A DNA stretch of 62,977 nucleotides, counting the filler, from Reticulomyxa filosa (Eukaryota > Protista > Foraminifera), in NCBI GenBank assembly GCA_000512085.1. It is 17 parts of 17 records of this genome, joined end to end, with 100 filler letters (N's around TTAATTAATTAA, not from the genome) between each part and the next. Parts side by side here need not be neighbours in the genome. Positions count along the whole stretch, not along the records: positions 1 to 12,436 come from ASPP01004526.1; 16 more parts are not named here. One strand, written 5' to 3'. The position numbers and the translations under genes were made by a program. Below, piece by piece: positions 1,891-12,395 of the stretch (position 1 is the first letter of the stretch; every line of letters begins with the position of its first letter). The notes under the pieces were generated by a model that was not told where the DNA came from, made no database searches, and worked only from the letters and a program-made list of their open reading frames with translations.

Positions 1891-3324
1891 TCAAACTAAT
1901 CCAGCCATTTTTAAGCTCAAATTGACAACACATTGCTGAACATCATTAAAGACTTTTTCGACGTTTTCCGCATTGGTAGCAGTGGTGATATGAGAGCTGC
2001 AGAGGAGAGGTGTTATTTGATCAAGCCATATACCATACACCATATGTTATATATCACATGATCTTATATGTATAGTGTATCCTCCCTTCACAAAAAAAAA
2101 ATTAGTGAAACACTCAACAAGGTTTCTCTTTCGGAGTTAGTATTCAGTCTGATAAAGAAATTTTGGATATAGTCGACAGCAGGTTGAAACTCTTGAGGTC
2201 CTTTATAATTGGGGAAAGCGCTGGTGATAGGAGTTTGTTTGATTTTTTCTCGCATTAAATCGGCTTTATTGAAAAACAGAATGAACCCCGTCTTTTCAAA
2301 GCACGAAAAGGCGAGTGTTTCCTCAAACACTTTAATTGACTCGAGCATATTATTGCCTAACTCGACATTCGCGTCCAAATCCGACACGTCTTCAAACGGT
2401 ACTTCATCGTAGCATGCCAAAGACACTACAAACAACACTGCTGTCACGCCTATTTCAAAAAGAGGGACATTATCATTAATAATTAGTTGTTTTTTTTTTT
2501 ATGTATTGTACATATTACATACATAATGTACATATGTATGTATATGTGTACATAAGTATGTATATGTATGCATATGTACCACACAAAATTGTATACAGCT
2601 TATAACCGTCAAAGAAATTAATCCATTTCTTACGTTCACTTCGCTGACCTCCGACATCACATATTTTGAATATGGCGCCATTGATTTTGAATTCCTTTTC
2701 GGTCATTCCCGTGGTTCTATATCGCACGAGCAAAATATCGGTGGTGGCGGGGTCAAAATTGGTCCGCGCGATAATATCAATTTCATCTAGAAAGTGCTGC
2801 GTACTGTCAGGGACGCATATCTTGTTGCGATGGTCAAACATTTTGCGAATTGCCGTCGACTTGGTCCACAGCAGTTTGACGTGGCCAGCCAATTGCTCAT
2901 TCATCACCGCGCTGCCATTGGCAAGGTCCTGTATATACTTGCAACTCTCTGCAAATTGCTCGTCGATCTTATATTGTTCAATTTCGTCGTCTTTTATCCC
3001 CTCGCGCAAGTTTTCTGTTCTCTCGTCTACTTCGTGCTCCTCGTCTGACAATTCGCCTGTCACTAGTTTGCATTGGCGAATCAGGATTTGCATACTCTCG
3101 ATCACCTGTCCATAGATTTGCTTGCGATAACCCTCTTTGTCTCGTGCACTGTATCCATCTCCGTGCAGTTGCTTCAATTGCTTGAAAAATGTCGACTTGC
3201 CACTCCCTCCTGCACCCAACAGCAATAGCTTGTGTACTCGTGCCTCTTGGGCTTTGTCTTTCTCTATCTCTCTTTGCACTTCACGATCTTTGTTGTCACG
3301 AGGACTTCCCAAACAACAGCCCAT
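1891..3324 (-). CDS. Heterotrimeric G-protein alpha subunit; exons 3324-2607, 2449-2119, 1996-1891
   Basis: MGCC N-terminus (myristoylation/palmitoylation), G1 GAGGSGKST, G2 RYRTTG, G3 DVGGQRSERKKW, G4 NKAD, G5 TTAT. GT-AG introns 2450-2606 and 1997-2118 restore the frame, ending LKMAGLV*. Confidence 0.97.
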
Positions 3325-3651: not shown

Positions 3652-4065
3652 TTATTTTCTTCCACCATCTTCGATTAAACGCTTTACCTGCTTTCCATCA
3701 TTTTTGTGTAGCATTTTTCTATCTTGTGGTGTCAAATGAATTTCACCTTTCTCCAAGATAATACGTATTGCGTTTTTTTTGTTCTCTTCGCCTAAGATAC
3801 TTGACCACATTGCGTGGCTTGCCAGTTCACCTTTGTGCACATCAAGGTAAATTTCTTCTTTTGCAACGATATCAGAGATATTCAAGCTTTTTTCTCCTCT
3901 TTGAAAGGCTAGGGCAGCGTGTGGATTCACTAAAATTTCTAATCGTTGTTTTTGCTTGGTTTTAAAGCGACATACTCGGACTTCTGGATTTTCGTCAATT
4001 GCACCAGTATAGCCAGTCTCAATAAATTGTTTTGTCCTCTTAGTAGTTGTTGCTTGTGACATCAT
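3652..4065 (-). CDS. Stand-alone SBDS N-terminal (FYSH) domain protein, Rtc3-like
   Basis: RLEILVNP..A..F..G, IYLDVHKGELAS and IRIILEKGEIHLT..DRK match the SBDS N-domain. The ORF stops at 137 aa with no C-terminal SBDS domains. Confidence 0.85.
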   Translation of the reverse strand: MMSQATTTKRTKQFIETGYTGAIDENPEVRVCRFKTKQKQRLEILVNPHAALAFQRGEKSLNISDIVAKEEIYLDVHKGELASHAMWSSILGEENKKNAIRIILEKGEIHLTPQDRKMLHKNDGKQVKRLIEDGGRK

Positions 4066-4489: not shown

Positions 4490-6671
4490 AATGAAAACAA
4501 GTGGGCAAAAAGAGAGCGTGAATATCGAAACTAGCAAGTCTGAGAAGGAGGAGGAAAAAAGAGAGTGTCTGTAGTTTGTGCATTAGCAAATTAAAACTCA
4601 AAAACAAATAAGGTATATCACACTGGACCAGTTGTTTAAACGCTTAGAAAAGGGCAAATCGTGGTTTAAAATATTACAAGGTGATGTGGAGAATCTTTGC
4701 AAAACATTTGACGAGTTTCTCGAAGGTAAAGTGACAGACTCCAAACCTGAAATAAAAGAATCAGTTAGTGTAAAAAGTACTTGTATCAATCTAAAAAAGA
4801 AAACGCCAATGCAATGTATAAAAAAAGTTTCTTTTTTTTTAAGATTTCAACAACGTCGATCTTGGAGATTCCAGAGAGGCTGAAAAATTTGAACAAAAAG
4901 GCAATGACGCATCTAGTGGATGCCGAGAAAGCATTGGGATTCAAAACAAAAGACATGACTACAATGCAAAACATCTTGCTTCCAATTCACTATAAAAAAA
5001 AAATGAAAATGAGGAATTACAACAAAAAAGCCAAGCATTGGCTCAATTGTAAATAGTTTCTTTTTTTTTTTTTTTTTTTTTGGGAGCAATCCGACTCAAA
5101 AAAAAACCAATGTACATGCATCCATCCAATTTTTAAAAATGTACAGAGAGCTCGAAAGGAAGACAAAAAAGTCAGTCACACTGTTACTGGTAGGAGAAAA
5201 AGGAGCCGGTCAAACCACTCTACAACAAGCGATTATTGATTATCTACGACAAGTTAGCTTTGAAGATGTCAAGGTAAGAGAAGAAGACGAAATATCGCAT
5301 CATACATTAGCCCAGCGAAATGGACAAAGAAATGAACACCCCCAAACATTGTCATGTGTAGGTGAAAACTCTGAATTGAAGGTAAAAGTAATTAGCACCC
5401 CTGGGTTAATTGACTCGAACGGAGAGATCAGAGATGCCGAAAATTGGGAAGCTATTTCGAATTGCATAGCAAAGCTCGATTTTAATGCCGTCGTTGTAGT
5501 TTTGAAAGGAAACACGAACAGACACCAAGAAAGACTTAAAGAAGGATTGACAAAGCTGGCGTACGTATTAACAAAAGAGGGCCAAAAAAATTGCTTCATA
5601 TTGTTCACAAGCTCAATTTCGGAGCCTGATCTCTCCATCCTACAATTGTTTGACCAAGTCCAGTTTTCGTTCCGCGCTTACGCCTGGCTTGACAATGAGC
5701 GTTATAAAAAAGGATACAACGTCAAACATGCAAGCCATACGCATAAAATGGTGTTTGACCAATCACAAAACACTATTAAGCAACTGTTAACTGTATCAGC
5801 TGTATTACCAGTTTAGTTTTTCTTTATACATCCTCCCCTTTTTGTCCACTCCATTGTTGGTGTATGTACGTATACTTGAGATGTTTTTTGACCCTATCAA
5901 AAAAAAAGTTGTGCCAAGGGAACAAACTGTGCATATTTCGTACAAGTGCCAATGCACAATTGGAAGAATTGCAGCAGTTACGTATAGATATAGAGAATAA
6001 GATTGCGGTGTTGCAGTCTTTACATGAGCTTAAAAGAAAGTTACACTTCCGCGGCGAAGGAGAGGATGTCAACATAGATGAATTGATTGCGAGAGATAGC
6101 AATCTTTCATCTTTACAAATTAAGGAAACTAGAACAGTTTAATTTGTTTAAATCCTCTCTCCCATTTAATGTTGCAACATTTTTTTCTCCTCTTATTTTT
6201 TTTTTTTTTTCTATCAATGTTGGTTTGAAATAGTTTCAAATTATTTGTTCGAAATGCGAAAAGACAAAGACAGTTTGTATGAGAAATTGTTCAGTTTCAA
6301 AAGAAGATAATTTATTCAAGTCCGGCTTATTTCAGATTGAAACTGATCGTAGTGGAACTTTAGCTGTTTTTACAGGTGTCAGTGGTGTCTTTGCTCTAGG
6401 GGCTGCCGCCCTTAGCTTTCCAATTTTTGCTGCTGGGACATTTGCAGCTATTTGTTATTCGGCGGCAAACGCTAAAGCGATATGCAGGAAATGTGGACAC
6501 CCGCAGTCAAGGCATGCCTTAATCACGAACACTCTCGGGTCAAGTGGAACAGTGGTAGACGAGGTCGACAAAGAGATCAAACGAATTTCAACGCAAAAGG
6601 AAGAAATGGAGAATAAAGTTCGACAATTAGAATATCGTTTGGATAATCTTCAAAAAGCTTTTTTCACATAG
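4490..6671 (+). CDS. Multi-exon P-loop GTPase-like protein (AIG1/septin-like fold) with degenerate G1/G3, coiled coils, a Cys/His cluster and a hydrophobic segment
   Basis: TLLLVGEKGAGQTTL and VKVISTPGLID in 5139-5816; coiled coil ~5940-6140; CSKC..C..C and CRKCGH....H flank a hydrophobic GVFALGAAALSFPIFAAG stretch. Exon boundaries and start are approximate. Confidence 0.65.
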
Positions 6672-10234: not shown

Positions 10235-10803
10235 CTCGCTTGATGAAGCCTCAAATGTTGGCTTTTTTTGTTATTTTATAGTGTAAAGATGAAAACTCGT
10301 TCTCTTTGCAAACTCACATCTTGCAAATGAAAAAAAATAATATTTATGACTATTTTGTTGCTACATTTCTTGTCGTATATATACTCCAAAGTACATGAAA
10401 ATAGTTTGTGTAGTTTTTTACAAATATTCACTACTCCATTCTTGGCCATGTAGCAAATGTTATATTTTCCATACTATTCACATTTCTTCCTTGCAAAAAG
10501 TGAAACAAAAAGAAAATTTATTTCAGAAGTCTACAATTGAATTACTCGACTGACTGTGGACAGAAGTTCCTGCTGAACTATTGATCCCTTTTTAATCTAA
10601 TAACATACTTTTGTACTTCTCTCTCTCGCACTTTCTTGCATTTCATCTGTTGATTCGTAACAATCTTTCTGCAATTGACTCATTTTTGAAAATAACTAAA
10701 GATAGTATCAGCAAAAAACCTTTCGTATTACACTTTTGCGACTAATGTAAATGATATTTTTCAAGTGAAAAATGAAAATGATAATGAAAAATGAAAAAAA
10801 AAC

Positions 10804-11108
10804 AACATCGACAGGGCTTGAATCCTGAGAGACGACCACTATGTCAAAGTGATCCCTGTAGGTTAGCTTGGGCCCCCTAAGAGCGAAGACATGTGCTTTA
10901 GGGAACTGGTCACCAGCTTATGCGATAGCAGCCTACAGAGCACATGCCCATAAGTGGCTTGTGATGGCAGTTCGCAGATAGGGCCCAATCTGGATGGTCT
11001 CAACGCCCTTGTCTACACACTACAAGGGTTTTCAACCTCTCACATACAGCCCTAGGGCGATACAACCTGTGAACTGTTTGATCCACCACTGTATCTCATC
11101 GATGTTTT
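10804..11108 (-). ncRNA. Candidate ~300-nt structured non-coding RNA, family unassigned (probably Pol III)
   Basis: 50% GC (151/300 counted for 10801-11100) against 13-17% in the flanking 60-mers. Terminal stem AACATCGATG/TGTCGATGTT and several internal helices whose G-U pairs favour the minus strand. A T-run follows immediately downstream, with TATA-like sequence at about -30. Confidence 0.6.
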
Positions 11109-11813
11109 GATATATATTTATTTCATTTTTTACTATATATTCAAATTTTTCTATCATAATAATTTTTTGGTGAATTTCATTATTTTTGAACAAGATGATC
11201 AGCTTTTCCACAAAAAGGTTCAATATAATTGCAATTATTTTTTCCCAGCTGATGACCGTATTGCCCCTTAGTCTTTGTATTCCACTTCTGCACAGCAAGA
11301 GTTAGCACAGTCAAAGTGTAATATGAAAGTAGTTTTATTCTGGCAACAATTCTCGTTAAATGAAACAAATTAGATAAGAAAACAATCACAAAATACAAGT
11401 TAATAAAAGTTTTGATGAAAGCGAAAGGCAAACTTTTAAGAAACAAGACTCACAGTCCCTTCCTAATTGTAATAGTTGATATAGTATCTCCTTACGAGAA
11501 ATTGAGCAACACAATCAGAAATAACATATATTTTACATATAATGAGCGAGATAATATTCATATATGTTTGGAATTGACGCAGTTGTCGCATTTTTGAAAA
11601 AAAAAACAGAATATACTACCTAATTACTGGATTGATACTGTATAAACTGTACTTATGAGATTTGTGCTAATTGAAAATATGCAACGTCAAGGACGTAAGA
11701 TTTTGATTATAGACAAACTAAACAGCAGATTCTAATACACGACAATTAAAAAAGGCTACAAGTTTTTAAAAAGCCTGTTAAGGGTCGTATATATAATAAT
11801 AAAATAACGACAT

Positions 11814-12395
11814 ATGGACTTCTTCCAGAACTTGAAAAGAGGCAAGAAAGAGGATGTCGAACTTCAAGAGGTTGAAAATAAGTATGAGGCTGGTTTAATA
11901 GCTAAAAATGAGAAGCAAAGTCTGATGTCAACAGACCAACCAGACCCAAACACAGACAGCGAAGAAACAAGAGATCCACAATCAAGCCGAAAAGAGATTG
12001 TGCGTTTAAGAAACGTCCACAAGGTTATTCCTTTGAGAAAAAAAGGGTAAAAATGAAAGTGGTTCAAGAACAAAATAATAATAATAATAATAATAAGACC
12101 TATTTGTTAGGATTGGAAGGTGTGCCCGCATTGCGCGGGGTGTCAATGACAATAGACGAGGGCGAATTTATAGTGATACTGGGAAAATCAGGGGGCGGTA
12201 AAACATCAATGTTGAACATCATGGGTACCATTGACAAGCCAACCAAAGGAGATTTGTACATTTGTGGAAAAAGTTACTTTTTTTTCATTGCTTACTTTGG
12301 TTTGCATAACATTCGCATCAACTTAAAAAAAAAAAAAAAGGGATAAGTAGTGCAAGTACAGATTCAGAATTAGCAGATACAAGATTGAAAAAAAT
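11814..12395 (+). CDS. ABC transporter ATP-binding protein, MacB/LolD-like (5' part, cut by contig end)
   Basis: IVRLRNVHK|TYLLGLEGVPALRGVSMTIDEGEFIVILGKSGGGKTSMLNIMGTIDKPTKG (Walker A); introns 12024-12097 and ~12273-12340. Confidence 0.88.

What the first reader, a model, noticed from the sequence alone, without database searches (positions are those of the whole stretch)
10804..11180. Unassigned ~300-nt highly structured RNA gene with a Pol III-like promoter and terminator
Seen: a sharp 50% GC island between 13-17% GC flanks with no credible ORF. On the minus strand the ends pair (5' AACAUCGAUG / 3' UGUCGAUGUU). Internal helices are GAUACA/UGUAUC enclosing GUGGAU/GUUCAC, CCCUUGU/ACAAGGG (or long-range GACAAGGGCGUUGAG/UUCAAGCCCUGUC), UUGGGCCC/GGGCCCAA, GCGAA/UUCGC, GGCAUGUGCU/AGCACAUGUC and GCUGG/CCAGU. 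The wobble pairs work only on the minus strand. A T-run follows the 3' end; TATA-like TATATAG lies at about -30 and a PSE-like TCACC at about -65. Known: this size and architecture fit SRP, RNase P/MRP, U3 or telomerase RNA. By eye it lacks the SRP helix-8 (CAGG..GNRA..AGCA), RNase P/MRP P4 (GAAAGUC) and U3 box signatures. Inference: a very divergent member of one of these classes or a new RNA family. Possible telomerase templates are CUAACCUA (10859-10866, TTAGG type, but unusually close to the 3' end) and UUGAAAACCCUUG (11023-11035).
Basis: partly seen in the sequence, partly recalled or inferred. Interest (0 to 1): 0.85.

Follow-up and report, generated by a model that had tools for sequence, protein, structure and literature searches.

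The report
Unclassified structured small-RNA gene family
This is a gene for a folded, non-coding RNA of about 300 bases in the foraminifer Reticulomyxa filosa; it is the best-kept of about 17 copies and matches no known RNA family, so it looks real but has no assigned function (the organism's unidentified telomerase RNA is one testable candidate).

Summary
There is a 50% GC island on the minus strand (window 11106-10804). Its flanks are 13-18% GC, and no ORF exceeds 46 aa. TATATAG lies at -33..-27 and a T9 run follows a terminal stem.

The genome is Reticulomyxa filosa, judged from its assembly statistics. It holds 17 copies, 9 of them full length. GC content and fold z-score decline together across the copies, and the window copy is the best preserved. 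Three copies have decayed to background composition.

Between the window copy and C1662/C26473, the RNA and promoter differ by 14-17%, while the co-duplicated downstream flank differs by 30-31% (P about 3e-5). Nine of 48 base pairs show compensatory changes against a 4% background (P about 1e-4).

A long-range helix, 18-42 with 128-146, is better supported.

Rfam gives no match. SRP RNA, RNase MRP RNA and U6 are encoded elsewhere in the genome. The signatures of RNase P (CR-I/CR-V), U3, Sm and H/ACA RNAs are absent.

It is not a SINE or MITE.

Verdict: a genuine Pol III-type structured RNA gene of an undescribed family, function unknown. Telomerase RNA remains possible at about 12%: TERT is present, but the telomere repeat is unknown. 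No expression data and no homologues in other species could be obtained.

The parts
10804..11106 (-). Transcribed region of the candidate RNA. RNA position p corresponds to window position 11107-p. It is 303 nt to the end of the terminal stem, and the primary transcript probably runs a few U further.
   Evidence: GC island; terminal stem with compensatory changes; 14% substitutions versus 30-31% in the flank; no Rfam match
10794..10802 (-). T9 run, a Pol III-type terminator, one base after the terminal stem
   Evidence: Sequence; a T-run of 7 or more stands at the same place in six of the nine full-length copies, is interrupted in C9057 and C8286, and is absent in C11893
11133..11142 (-). GAATATATAG, a TATA-like element at -36..-27
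   Evidence: Conserved in the paralogues; collinear with TATATATAG upstream of SRP RNA copy L019
11107..11119 (-). AAATATATATCAA, a start-proximal AT element at -13..-1
   Evidence: Conserved in the paralogues; SRP copy L019 ends its upstream with ...ATATATACTATCAA at the same position
11145..11177 (-).
   Evidence: Alignment A1; promoter divergence 15-17% versus 30-31% in the flank
11099..11106 (-). 5' strand of the terminal stem P1 (RNA 1-8), pairing with RNA 296-303 (window 10804-10811)
   Evidence: 47 of 48 cells paired in six copies; 3 of 8 pairs show compensatory change, P = 0.003
11065..11089 (-). 5' strand of the long-range helix (RNA 18-42: GUGGUGG..CAGU.CACAGGU), pairing with RNA 128-146
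   Evidence: RNAalifold; also present in the window MFE fold; compensatory changes including transversion pairs in C7551 and C19366; 6 broken cells versus 22 expected
10961..10979 (-). 3' strand of the long-range helix (RNA 128-146: AUCUGCG.ACUG CCAUCAC)
   Evidence: As for the 5' strand
11006..11028 (-). Hairpin CCCUUGU/ACAAGGG (RNA 79-101); variable tip, replaced by another hairpin in C19366 and partly deleted in C7551
   Evidence: C-G changes to U-A in four copies
10904..10918 (-). Hairpin AGCUGG-UGA-CCAGUU (RNA 189-203), in the most conserved block
   Evidence: 36 of 36 cells paired in six copies, with C-G to U-G changes
10875..10903 (-). Hairpin CCCUAAAGC / GCU-C-UUAGGG (RNA 204-232)
   Evidence: Two independent C-G to A-U transversion compensations: 206/230 in the C1662 group and 205/231 in C19366
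10859..10866 (-). CUAACCUA (RNA 241-248), a template-like 8-mer of TTAGG type. It lies 1-2 nt 3' of the possible helix UUGGGCCC/GGGCCCAA.
   Evidence: Sequence; identical in win, C1662 and C19366, with a 1-nt deletion in C26473; function not shown
10812..10827 (-). 3' hairpin CAGG-AUUCAAGC-CCUG (RNA 280-295) directly before the P1 3' strand; its loop resembles a T-loop or B-box. RNA 289-295 may alternatively pair with UAGGGCU at RNA 53-59.
   Evidence: C19366 covaries (UAGG/CCUA); ARAGORN finds no tRNA or tmRNA
10567..10761 (-). Downstream flank co-duplicated with the gene in all full-length copies; unstructured; used here as the neutral yardstick
   Evidence: fold z = +0.2 on both strands

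Best explanation
The window holds the best-preserved member of a Reticulomyxa filosa gene family encoding a structured small RNA of about 300 nt that belongs to no described RNA family.

It is most likely transcribed by RNA polymerase III, or a closely related snRNA-type system. Transcription would start from an upstream AT/TATA-type promoter, with conserved blocks out to about -70, and end at the T9 run that directly follows a terminal stem joining the 5' and 3' ends.

The RNA folds into a 5' domain closed by a long irregular helix (nt 18-42 with 128-146). A 3' domain carries two conserved hairpins (nt 189-203 and 204-232). The whole is closed by the terminal stem.

Shown here: the sequence features; the family of 17 copies; slower change of the RNA and promoter than of the co-duplicated flank; and compensatory pair changes.

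Inferred: transcription, the polymerase, and function. My best guess for function is a stable protein-bound scaffold RNA (an RNP component) specific to this lineage. Among named classes the only live candidate is telomerase RNA, at about 12%. Two to four copies (window, C1662, C26473, perhaps C19366) may be active; the rest are pseudogenes decaying towards the AT-rich background.
For: GC 0.505 against flanks of 0.135-0.18, and no ORF over 46 aa.

There are 17 copies in the genome, 9 of them full length. They form a gradient: window GC 0.50, z = -2.8; C1662 and C26473 GC 0.44, z = -3.1 and -2.4; three copies at GC about 0.30 with z above -1.3.

Window versus C1662/C26473: RNA 14% substitutions, promoter 15-17%, downstream flank 30-31% (Fisher P = 2.5e-5 and 6.6e-5). 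Window versus the decayed copy C8286: 33% versus 32%.

Revised structure: 86.6% of cells paired, covariation 0.156 versus 0.121 in shuffles (6/500), and at most 0.075 when partners are slid. In the six best copies, 48 pairs have 91.7% of cells paired, and 9 pairs show compensatory change against a 4% background, binomial P = 1e-4.

The T-run follows the terminal stem in the six best copies. The upstream region is collinear with that of SRP RNA copy L019, with TATATAG and ...TATCAA at the same distances (shuffle test 22/500).

There is no Rfam match at E<=10 on a 351-nt slice or on five paralogue loci.
Against: There is no expression evidence: no sequencing run could be listed. No homologue was found outside this genome, so all comparative evidence comes from paralogues, several of which are pseudogenes.

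Some compensatory changes are G-C to A-U, which AT-biased decay can mimic. The promoter resemblance to the SRP gene is only marginally significant in this AT-rich context (P about 0.04). The U6 genes have a different upstream region.

Parts of the fold are ambiguous. The palindromes GGGCCC and GCCCUAGGGC allow alternative pairings: UUGGGCCC/GGGCCCAA, UAGGGCU/AGCCCUG and AUCC/GGAU each have one supporting copy and would cross the long-range helix.

Function is not demonstrated.
Confidence: 0.65

Rival explanations
1. It is the telomerase RNA of Reticulomyxa. CUAACCUA (RNA 241-248) would template TTAGG-type repeats: 3 nt for alignment plus 5 nt copied. The helix ending 1-2 nt upstream (GGGCCCAA) would act as the template boundary.
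For: A TERT RNA-binding domain is encoded in the genome (62.5 bits), so a telomerase RNA must exist. None is known in Rhizaria, and known ciliate and plant telomerase RNAs are Pol III transcripts with upstream promoters (PMC8287931). Such RNAs evolve too fast for homology search, which fits the Rfam blank. Size, closing stem and U-run 3' end all fit. The 8-mer is identical in the three best copies. I estimate from word counts, not from a computation, that such a telomere-like periodic word occurs by chance in about 2-5% of 300-nt sequences.
Against: The telomere repeat of this organism is unknown (PMC13746701). The assembly holds only one interstitial (CCTAA)7 array and three short TTAGGG sites, none of them terminal arrays. 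The word lies near the 3' end, downstream of the possible pseudoknot, the reverse of all known telomerase RNAs. In the RNAalifold model, CCUACAG is paired with CUGUAGG. C26473 carries a deletion in the word. Seventeen copies with pseudogenes is unusual for this RNA. Twenty-two other periodic words exist in the RNA.
Confidence: 0.12
2. It is not a functional gene. A GC-richer segment inside a dispersed 600-bp segmental repeat merely looks like an RNA gene, or the whole family is dead.
For: The duplicated unit (-70 to about +540) is larger than the RNA. The downstream 200 nt aligns in all copies at 0.5-0.7 identity. Most copies are visibly decayed. There is no expression data. Single-sequence z-scores are moderate.
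Against: The RNA and promoter change at half the rate of the flank in the best lineages. Compensatory changes exceed background. The T-run and TATA sit exactly at the ends of the conserved structured part. GC 0.50 is maintained against a background of 0.13-0.36.
Confidence: 0.12
3. It is a very divergent nuclear RNase P RNA. P1 would be the terminal stem, AUCCAGA/UCAGGAU a P4-like long-range helix, and the inner part a specificity domain.
For: The Rfam RNaseP_nuc model finds nothing in this genome, although only 15 candidates were scored. Size and Pol III-type gene structure fit. A nested P1/P2/P3/P4-like topology can be drawn, and AUCC/GGAU covaries to AUAA/UUAU in one decayed copy.
Against: The universally conserved CR-I and CR-V motifs are absent, even allowing one mismatch. 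No RNase P or MRP family matches at E<=10, whereas the genome's own MRP RNA scores 62 bits and shows GGAAAGUC and ACCCAACGAGGCUUA. A PRORP (protein-only RNase P) homologue is present and the RNase P-specific Rpr2/Rpp21 was not found.
Confidence: 0.03
4. It is a U3-like or other pre-rRNA-processing guide RNA, using the box A-like stretch CAGGGAUCACUUUGACAUAGUG.
For: The Rfam U3 model finds no U3 in the assembly. The stretch at RNA 249-270 resembles the U3 A'/A boxes as I recall them from memory, which makes this a lead and not a test.
Against: There are no conserved box C, C', B or D and no k-turn at the terminal stem. The motif lies near the 3' end, not the 5' end. It forms a hairpin stem that covaries (GUGAUCAC/GUGAUCAU in the paralogues), and the likeness to U3 exists only in the window copy. 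No U3 family matches.
Confidence: 0.03
5. It is a SINE, MITE or other mobile element, or a tRNA/tmRNA-like molecule.
For: There are 17 dispersed copies, many decayed or truncated. The 3' hairpin loop AUUCAAGC next to the terminal stem resembles a T-arm or B box, and AGUGG near +17 resembles part of an A box.
Against: The copies include 70 nt of upstream promoter and about 230 nt of downstream flank, so they did not arise from the transcript. No terminal inverted repeats or target-site duplications were found. Different copy pairs share different larger extents, as expected of segmental duplications. ARAGORN finds no tRNA or tmRNA down to 85% of its thresholds and only inconsistent noise at 70%.
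Confidence: 0.03

Closest known systems
Pol III small-RNA genes with upstream (type-3-like) promoters, such as the 7SL/SRP and RNase MRP RNA genes of the same genome
   Same: About 300 nt; AT/TATA element upstream; a T-run directly after a stem that pairs the two ends; several genomic copies. The upstream region is collinear with SRP copy L019.
   Different: No sequence similarity to the SRP or MRP RNAs. No helix-8 motif and no CR-I/CR-V. No Rfam match.
Telomerase RNAs of ciliates and plants (Pol III transcripts; PMC8287931)
   Same: Gene type, size range, closing stem, U-run 3' end, and lack of detectable homology between lineages. A short periodic C-rich word lies next to a helix.
   Different: The template cannot be checked because the telomere repeat is unknown. 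The word is near the 3' end. No pseudoknot or stem-terminus element has been demonstrated. Many copies and pseudogenes.
RNase P / RNase MRP RNA
   Same: Size; terminal P1-like stem; nested long-range helices enclosing a second domain.
   Different: The conserved catalytic-core sequences are absent. A separate canonical MRP RNA exists. PRORP is present.
Lineage-restricted Pol III RNAs with pseudogene families, such as rodent 4.5SH/4.5SI and BC1 (from my own knowledge, not tested here)
   Same: Restricted to one lineage as far as can be seen; multi-copy with decayed copies; no universal function known a priori.
   Different: Those derive from tRNA/7SL SINEs with internal promoters. This family shows an external promoter and no similarity to tRNA or 7SL.

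Membership tests
SRP (7SL) RNA | Helix 8 with a GNAR tetraloop and conserved AGCA-type loops; a match to the SRP covariance models | tested here: not met
   No SRP family at E<=10 and no GNARNNNAGCA. The genome's SRP RNAs lie elsewhere and carry GGCCGGAAACGGAGCA. No similarity to them.
RNase P / MRP RNA | P4 helix with CR-I (GNAANNUCNGNG) and CR-V (ACNNNANNNNGNNUA) | tested here: not met
   No exact or one-mismatch match in any of six copies. No clan CL00002 match. A canonical MRP RNA is at C20817.
U3 snoRNA | 5'-terminal A'/A boxes plus box C'/D and B/C k-turns | tested here: not met
   RUGAUGA and CUGA are not conserved in the copies. The box A-like stretch lies at nt 249-270 and only in the window copy. 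No U3 family match.
Telomerase RNA | A single-stranded template complementary to at least 1.3-1.5 telomere repeats of the same organism | not testable with these tools
   The telomere repeat is unknown. The assembly has no terminal arrays. The candidate CUAACCUA exists.
Telomerase RNA | Template-boundary helix 5' of the template, a pseudoknot, and a stem-terminus element | tested here: inconclusive
   The helix UUGGGCCC/GGGCCCAA ends 1-2 nt before the word and has one compensatory pair (C10879), but it competes with other pairings. No supported pseudoknot follows the word.
Pol III gene with upstream promoter (type-3-like) | Upstream TATA-like element about 25-30 nt before the start; a T-run terminator; upstream sequences conserved | tested here: met
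   TATATAG at -33..-27 and a T9 run after the terminal stem. The promoter is conserved among copies. It resembles the SRP L019 upstream.
Pol III gene with upstream promoter (type-3-like) | Actual transcription by Pol III | not testable with these tools
   No sequencing run was listed.
SINE / MITE | Copies bounded by the transcript (SINE) or by terminal inverted repeats (MITE), with target-site duplications | tested here: not met
   The copies extend from -70 to about +540. No terminal inverted repeats were found.
tRNA / tmRNA-like | Acceptor stem plus canonical T-arm recognised by ARAGORN | tested here: not met

The most novel reading that the evidence does not exclude
This is the telomerase RNA of a foraminifer, the first for Rhizaria. 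It would be a Pol III transcript whose template CUAACCUA, set against a boundary helix, specifies TTAGG-type telomeres. Its layout would be unusual, with the template 3' of the main structured core.
Probability: 0.12. Interest if true: 0.85.

Novelty: new variant of a known kind. Interest (0 to 1): 0.55.

Why it matters
Foraminifera and Rhizaria as a whole have almost no annotated non-coding RNAs. Even this genome's SRP RNA falls below Rfam's threshold, and no U3, RNase P RNA or telomerase RNA has been identified.

This is a well-delimited RNA gene of about 300 nt with a Pol III-type promoter, under purifying selection, and matching no known family. It is either a lineage-specific RNP component or one of the missing essential RNAs in unrecognisable form.

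It gives a concrete target for a northern blot, RACE or pull-down. It also gives a promoter pattern that could help find other small-RNA genes in this genome. If it proved to be telomerase RNA, it would also reveal the foraminiferal telomere repeat and extend the Pol III telomerase-RNA lineage to Rhizaria.

Tried and rejected
- Rfam cmscan: on the whole contig, on a 351-nt slice at E<=10, and on five paralogue loci. Nothing over the RNA.
- Own-genome family searches. SRP, MRP and U6 were found elsewhere. RNaseP_nuc and U3 were not found, but the assembly is incomplete and only some candidates were scored.
- Telomere patterns T2-4AG3 and TTAGG. Only three short TTAGGG sites and one interstitial (CCTAA)7 array were found, so the telomere repeat is not established.
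- Sequencing runs: none listed, so read laying could not be used.
- Two metagenome pattern scans with the most conserved block: 0 hits.
- Exact-protein look-up of the 46-aa spurious ORF, as a proxy for transcript contigs: not on record.
- Literature: nothing on Reticulomyxa small RNAs or foraminiferal telomeres.
- Second template UUGAAAACCCUUG: rejected. It overlaps a covarying hairpin and is deleted or replaced in C7551 and C19366.
- Pseudoknot UGAGAGG/UCUCUCA: perfect only in the window copy, rejected.
- Downstream conserved flank as a second RNA gene: not structured, z = +0.2.
- tRNA/tmRNA-like reading of the terminal stem plus T-loop-like hairpin: no ARAGORN support.
- Hammerhead, Sm-site and H/ACA motifs: absent.
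- Unbiased helix enumeration over nine copies was too noisy to use directly. It was replaced by tests against a background of random column pairs.

Full report
**Organism and context.** The window is contig C4526 of a 101,867,045-base assembly in 50,809 contigs. These figures match those published for Reticulomyxa filosa: 101.9 Mb in 50,809 scaffolds (PMC13746701). Neighbouring ORFs are eukaryotic: a G-protein alpha subunit, an SBDS domain and a P-loop GTPase.

**Checking the observation.** On the minus strand, window 11106-10804 has 50.5% GC. The 70 nt on either side have 13.5% and 18%, and the contig as a whole has 35.6%.
- No reading frame is open for more than 46 codons.
- A T9 run (10794-10802) follows the terminal stem after one base.
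- TATATAG lies at -33..-27 and TCACC at -67..-63.
- Folding energy alone is unremarkable: z = -2.1 on the minus strand and -1.8 on the plus strand.

The case therefore has to rest on comparative evidence.

**A gene family.**
- A DNA search found 11 matches, and a sequence profile found 17 copies in this genome, nine of them full length.
- Similarity between copies starts about 70 nt upstream of the RNA and continues about 230 nt beyond the T-run. Different pairs share different larger extents, and no terminal inverted repeats are present. These are DNA-level duplications of a gene with its flanks, not SINE or MITE insertions.
- The copies form a decay series. The window copy has GC 0.50 and z = -2.8. 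C1662 and C26473 have GC 0.44, with z = -3.1 and -2.4. C19366 has GC 0.45. C10879 has 0.40 and C7551 has 0.37. C9057, C11893 and C8286 have GC of about 0.30 and z between -0.4 and -1.2.
- The window copy is the best preserved.

**Selection.** The unstructured downstream flank (fold z = +0.2) serves as a neutral yardstick.
- Between the window copy and C1662 or C26473, substitutions are 14% in the RNA, 15-17% in the 70-nt promoter and 30-31% in the flank (Fisher P = 2.5e-5 and 6.6e-5).
- Against the decayed copy C8286, the RNA and flank differ equally, 33% and 32%.

At least two lineages of the family have therefore been under purifying selection on both the promoter and the RNA.

**Structure.**
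They give a long-range helix instead: GUGGUGG/CCAUCAC, CAGU/ACUG and CACAGGU/AUCUGCG, that is nt 18-42 with nt 128-146.
- This helix keeps its pairing through different sequences: UACAGGU/AUCUGUA in the C1662 group, CAAAGAU/AUCUUUG in C19366, and GUGAUUG/CAAUCAC in C7551.
- The terminal stem changes from AACAUCGA/UCGAUGUU to GAUAUCGA/UCGAUAUC, including an A-U to G-C change that runs against the AT mutation bias.
- The hairpin CCCUAAAGC/GCU-C-UUAGGG has two independent C-G to A-U transversion pairs.
- I tested these helices against a background of all column pairs that can pair in the window copy, of which 4% show a compensatory change among the six better copies. The terminal stem has 3 of 8 pairs compensated (P = 0.003). 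The long helix has 3 of 18 (P = 0.03), with 6 broken cells where 22 are expected.
- Over the 48 pairs of the revised core, 9 pairs are compensated (P = 1e-4).
- The counting tool gives the revised model 86.6% paired cells and a covariation score of 0.156. Shuffles give 0.121 (6 of 500 reach the observed value) and slid partners give at most 0.075.
- Some ambiguity remains. UUGGGCCC/GGGCCCAA, UAGGGCU/AGCCCUG and AUCC/GGAU each have a supporting copy, and they would cross the long helix, so a pseudoknotted fold is possible.

A caveat applies to all of this. The sequences are paralogues, some of them dead, and G-C to A-U double changes can arise from AT-biased decay. The transversion pairs and the A-U to G-C change are the more telling cases.

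**Promoter and polymerase.**
- The 70 nt upstream are conserved among the copies.
- The upstream of one SRP RNA copy (L019, contig C47817) is collinear with it. TATATAG(A)AGTAAAAAAT and ...ATATA..TATCAA end at position -1 in both. A shuffle test is only marginal, 22 of 500, because both sequences are AT-rich.
- The MRP RNA gene also has GAATATATATAG just upstream. The U6 genes look different.
- Together with the T-run, Pol III is the most likely polymerase. This is an inference.

**What it is not.**
- Rfam gives no match at E<=10 on the slice or on the paralogues.
- SRP RNA genes with a canonical GGCCGGAAACGGAGCA helix 8 lie on other contigs, although they score below Rfam's gathering threshold.
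- A canonical RNase MRP RNA (62 bits) and nine U6 genes are also elsewhere.
- The candidate has no local similarity to the SRP or MRP RNAs.
- CR-I, CR-V, box C/D, the SRP helix-8 motif, an Sm site, a hammerhead core and a 3' ACA are all absent.
- ARAGORN sees no tRNA or tmRNA.
- RNase P RNA is further disfavoured because a PRORP homologue is present and Rpr2/Rpp21 was not found.

**Telomerase RNA.**
- TERT is encoded in the genome. No telomerase RNA is known for any rhizarian, and the known ciliate and plant telomerase RNAs are Pol III transcripts with upstream promoters (PMC8287931).
- CUAACCUA (nt 241-248) would template TTAGG and lies 1-2 nt after a possible helix.
- However, the telomere repeat of foraminifera is undescribed. 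The assembly holds only one interstitial (CCTAA)7 array and three short TTAGGG sites.
- The word is near the 3' end. It is partly paired in one model, and it carries a deletion in C26473. Twenty-two other periodic words exist in the RNA.
- I put this reading at about 12%.

**What could not be done.** No sequencing run was listed. No homologue was found in metagenome contigs. There is no literature on small RNAs of this organism.

**Verdict.** This is a genuine, well-delimited gene for a structured small RNA of an undescribed family, probably made by Pol III. The window copy is the best-preserved of a family that is mostly pseudogenes. Its function is open.

Noticed in passing
G000:C47817 (L019), C9208 (L018), C1831 (L017), C14692 (L020): SRP RNA genes with a canonical helix-8 motif (GGCCGGAAACGGAGCA) score only 33-48 bits against Protozoa_SRP, below the gathering score. 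Their true 5' ends (GAUGAGUYG...) lie about 25 nt upstream of the model match, and the ends pair with ...CUCAUC before a T-run. Only L019 has the TATATAG-type upstream.
   Followed up: partly
G000:C20817:2572-2860 (L028): A canonical RNase MRP RNA (62 bits) with GGAAAGUC, a GCAGAAAUGC loop and ACCCAACGAGGCUUA. GAATATATATAG stands directly upstream and a T9 run downstream.
   Followed up: partly
G000 genome-wide: The Rfam RNaseP_nuc and U3 models found nothing. A PRORP (protein-only RNase P) homologue is on C21920 and C42001, and no Rpr2/Rpp21 was found. This may point to protein-only RNase P in this foraminifer, but the assembly is incomplete.
   Followed up: no
G000:C27058:1154-1462 and C14242:4346-4657: Two loci match the TERT RNA-binding domain (62.5 and 48.9 bits); the second has an in-frame TGA. 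Telomerase is therefore present, while no telomeric arrays are in the assembly.
   Followed up: no
G000:C9885:1231-1265 (L014): A perfect interstitial (CCTAA)7 array directly next to a C-rich tract (CCCTCTCTTCCCCCCTCCCCCCCTCCCCC). It is the only TTAGG-type array found.
   Followed up: partly
G000:C5505:11525-11629 (-) and 11934-12038 (+): Nine U6 genes are identical over the 105-nt model match, including a head-to-head pair 300 nt apart. Their upstream regions share AAGTGTG..CATGAAAA and lack the TATATAG element.
   Followed up: no
window 2500-2597: An imperfect (TA/TG/CA)-rich palindromic microsatellite gives sub-threshold matches to several miRNA families (mir-297, mir-466 and others) on both strands. 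This looks like a low-complexity artefact.
   Followed up: no
window 10832-10858 (RNA 249-275): CAGGGAUCACUUUGACAUAGUG resembles the U3 A'/A boxes as I recall them from memory. The resemblance exists only in the window copy. In the paralogues the stretch is a covarying hairpin, GUGAUCAC/GUGAUCAU.
   Followed up: partly
window 10567-10761: About 200 nt downstream of the T-run are co-duplicated in all full-length copies. The stretch includes a small hairpin plus a second T-run (GCAAAAGUGU..UUUUUU). It is unstructured overall and its role, if any, is unknown.
   Followed up: partly
window 2515-3324 (-), 3652-4065 (-), 5139-5816 (+): ORFs matching a G-protein alpha subunit (E = 1e-54), the SBDS N-terminal domain (E = 2e-17), and weakly an AIG1/septin-like P-loop GTPase. 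These are probably exons of ordinary nuclear genes.
   Followed up: no
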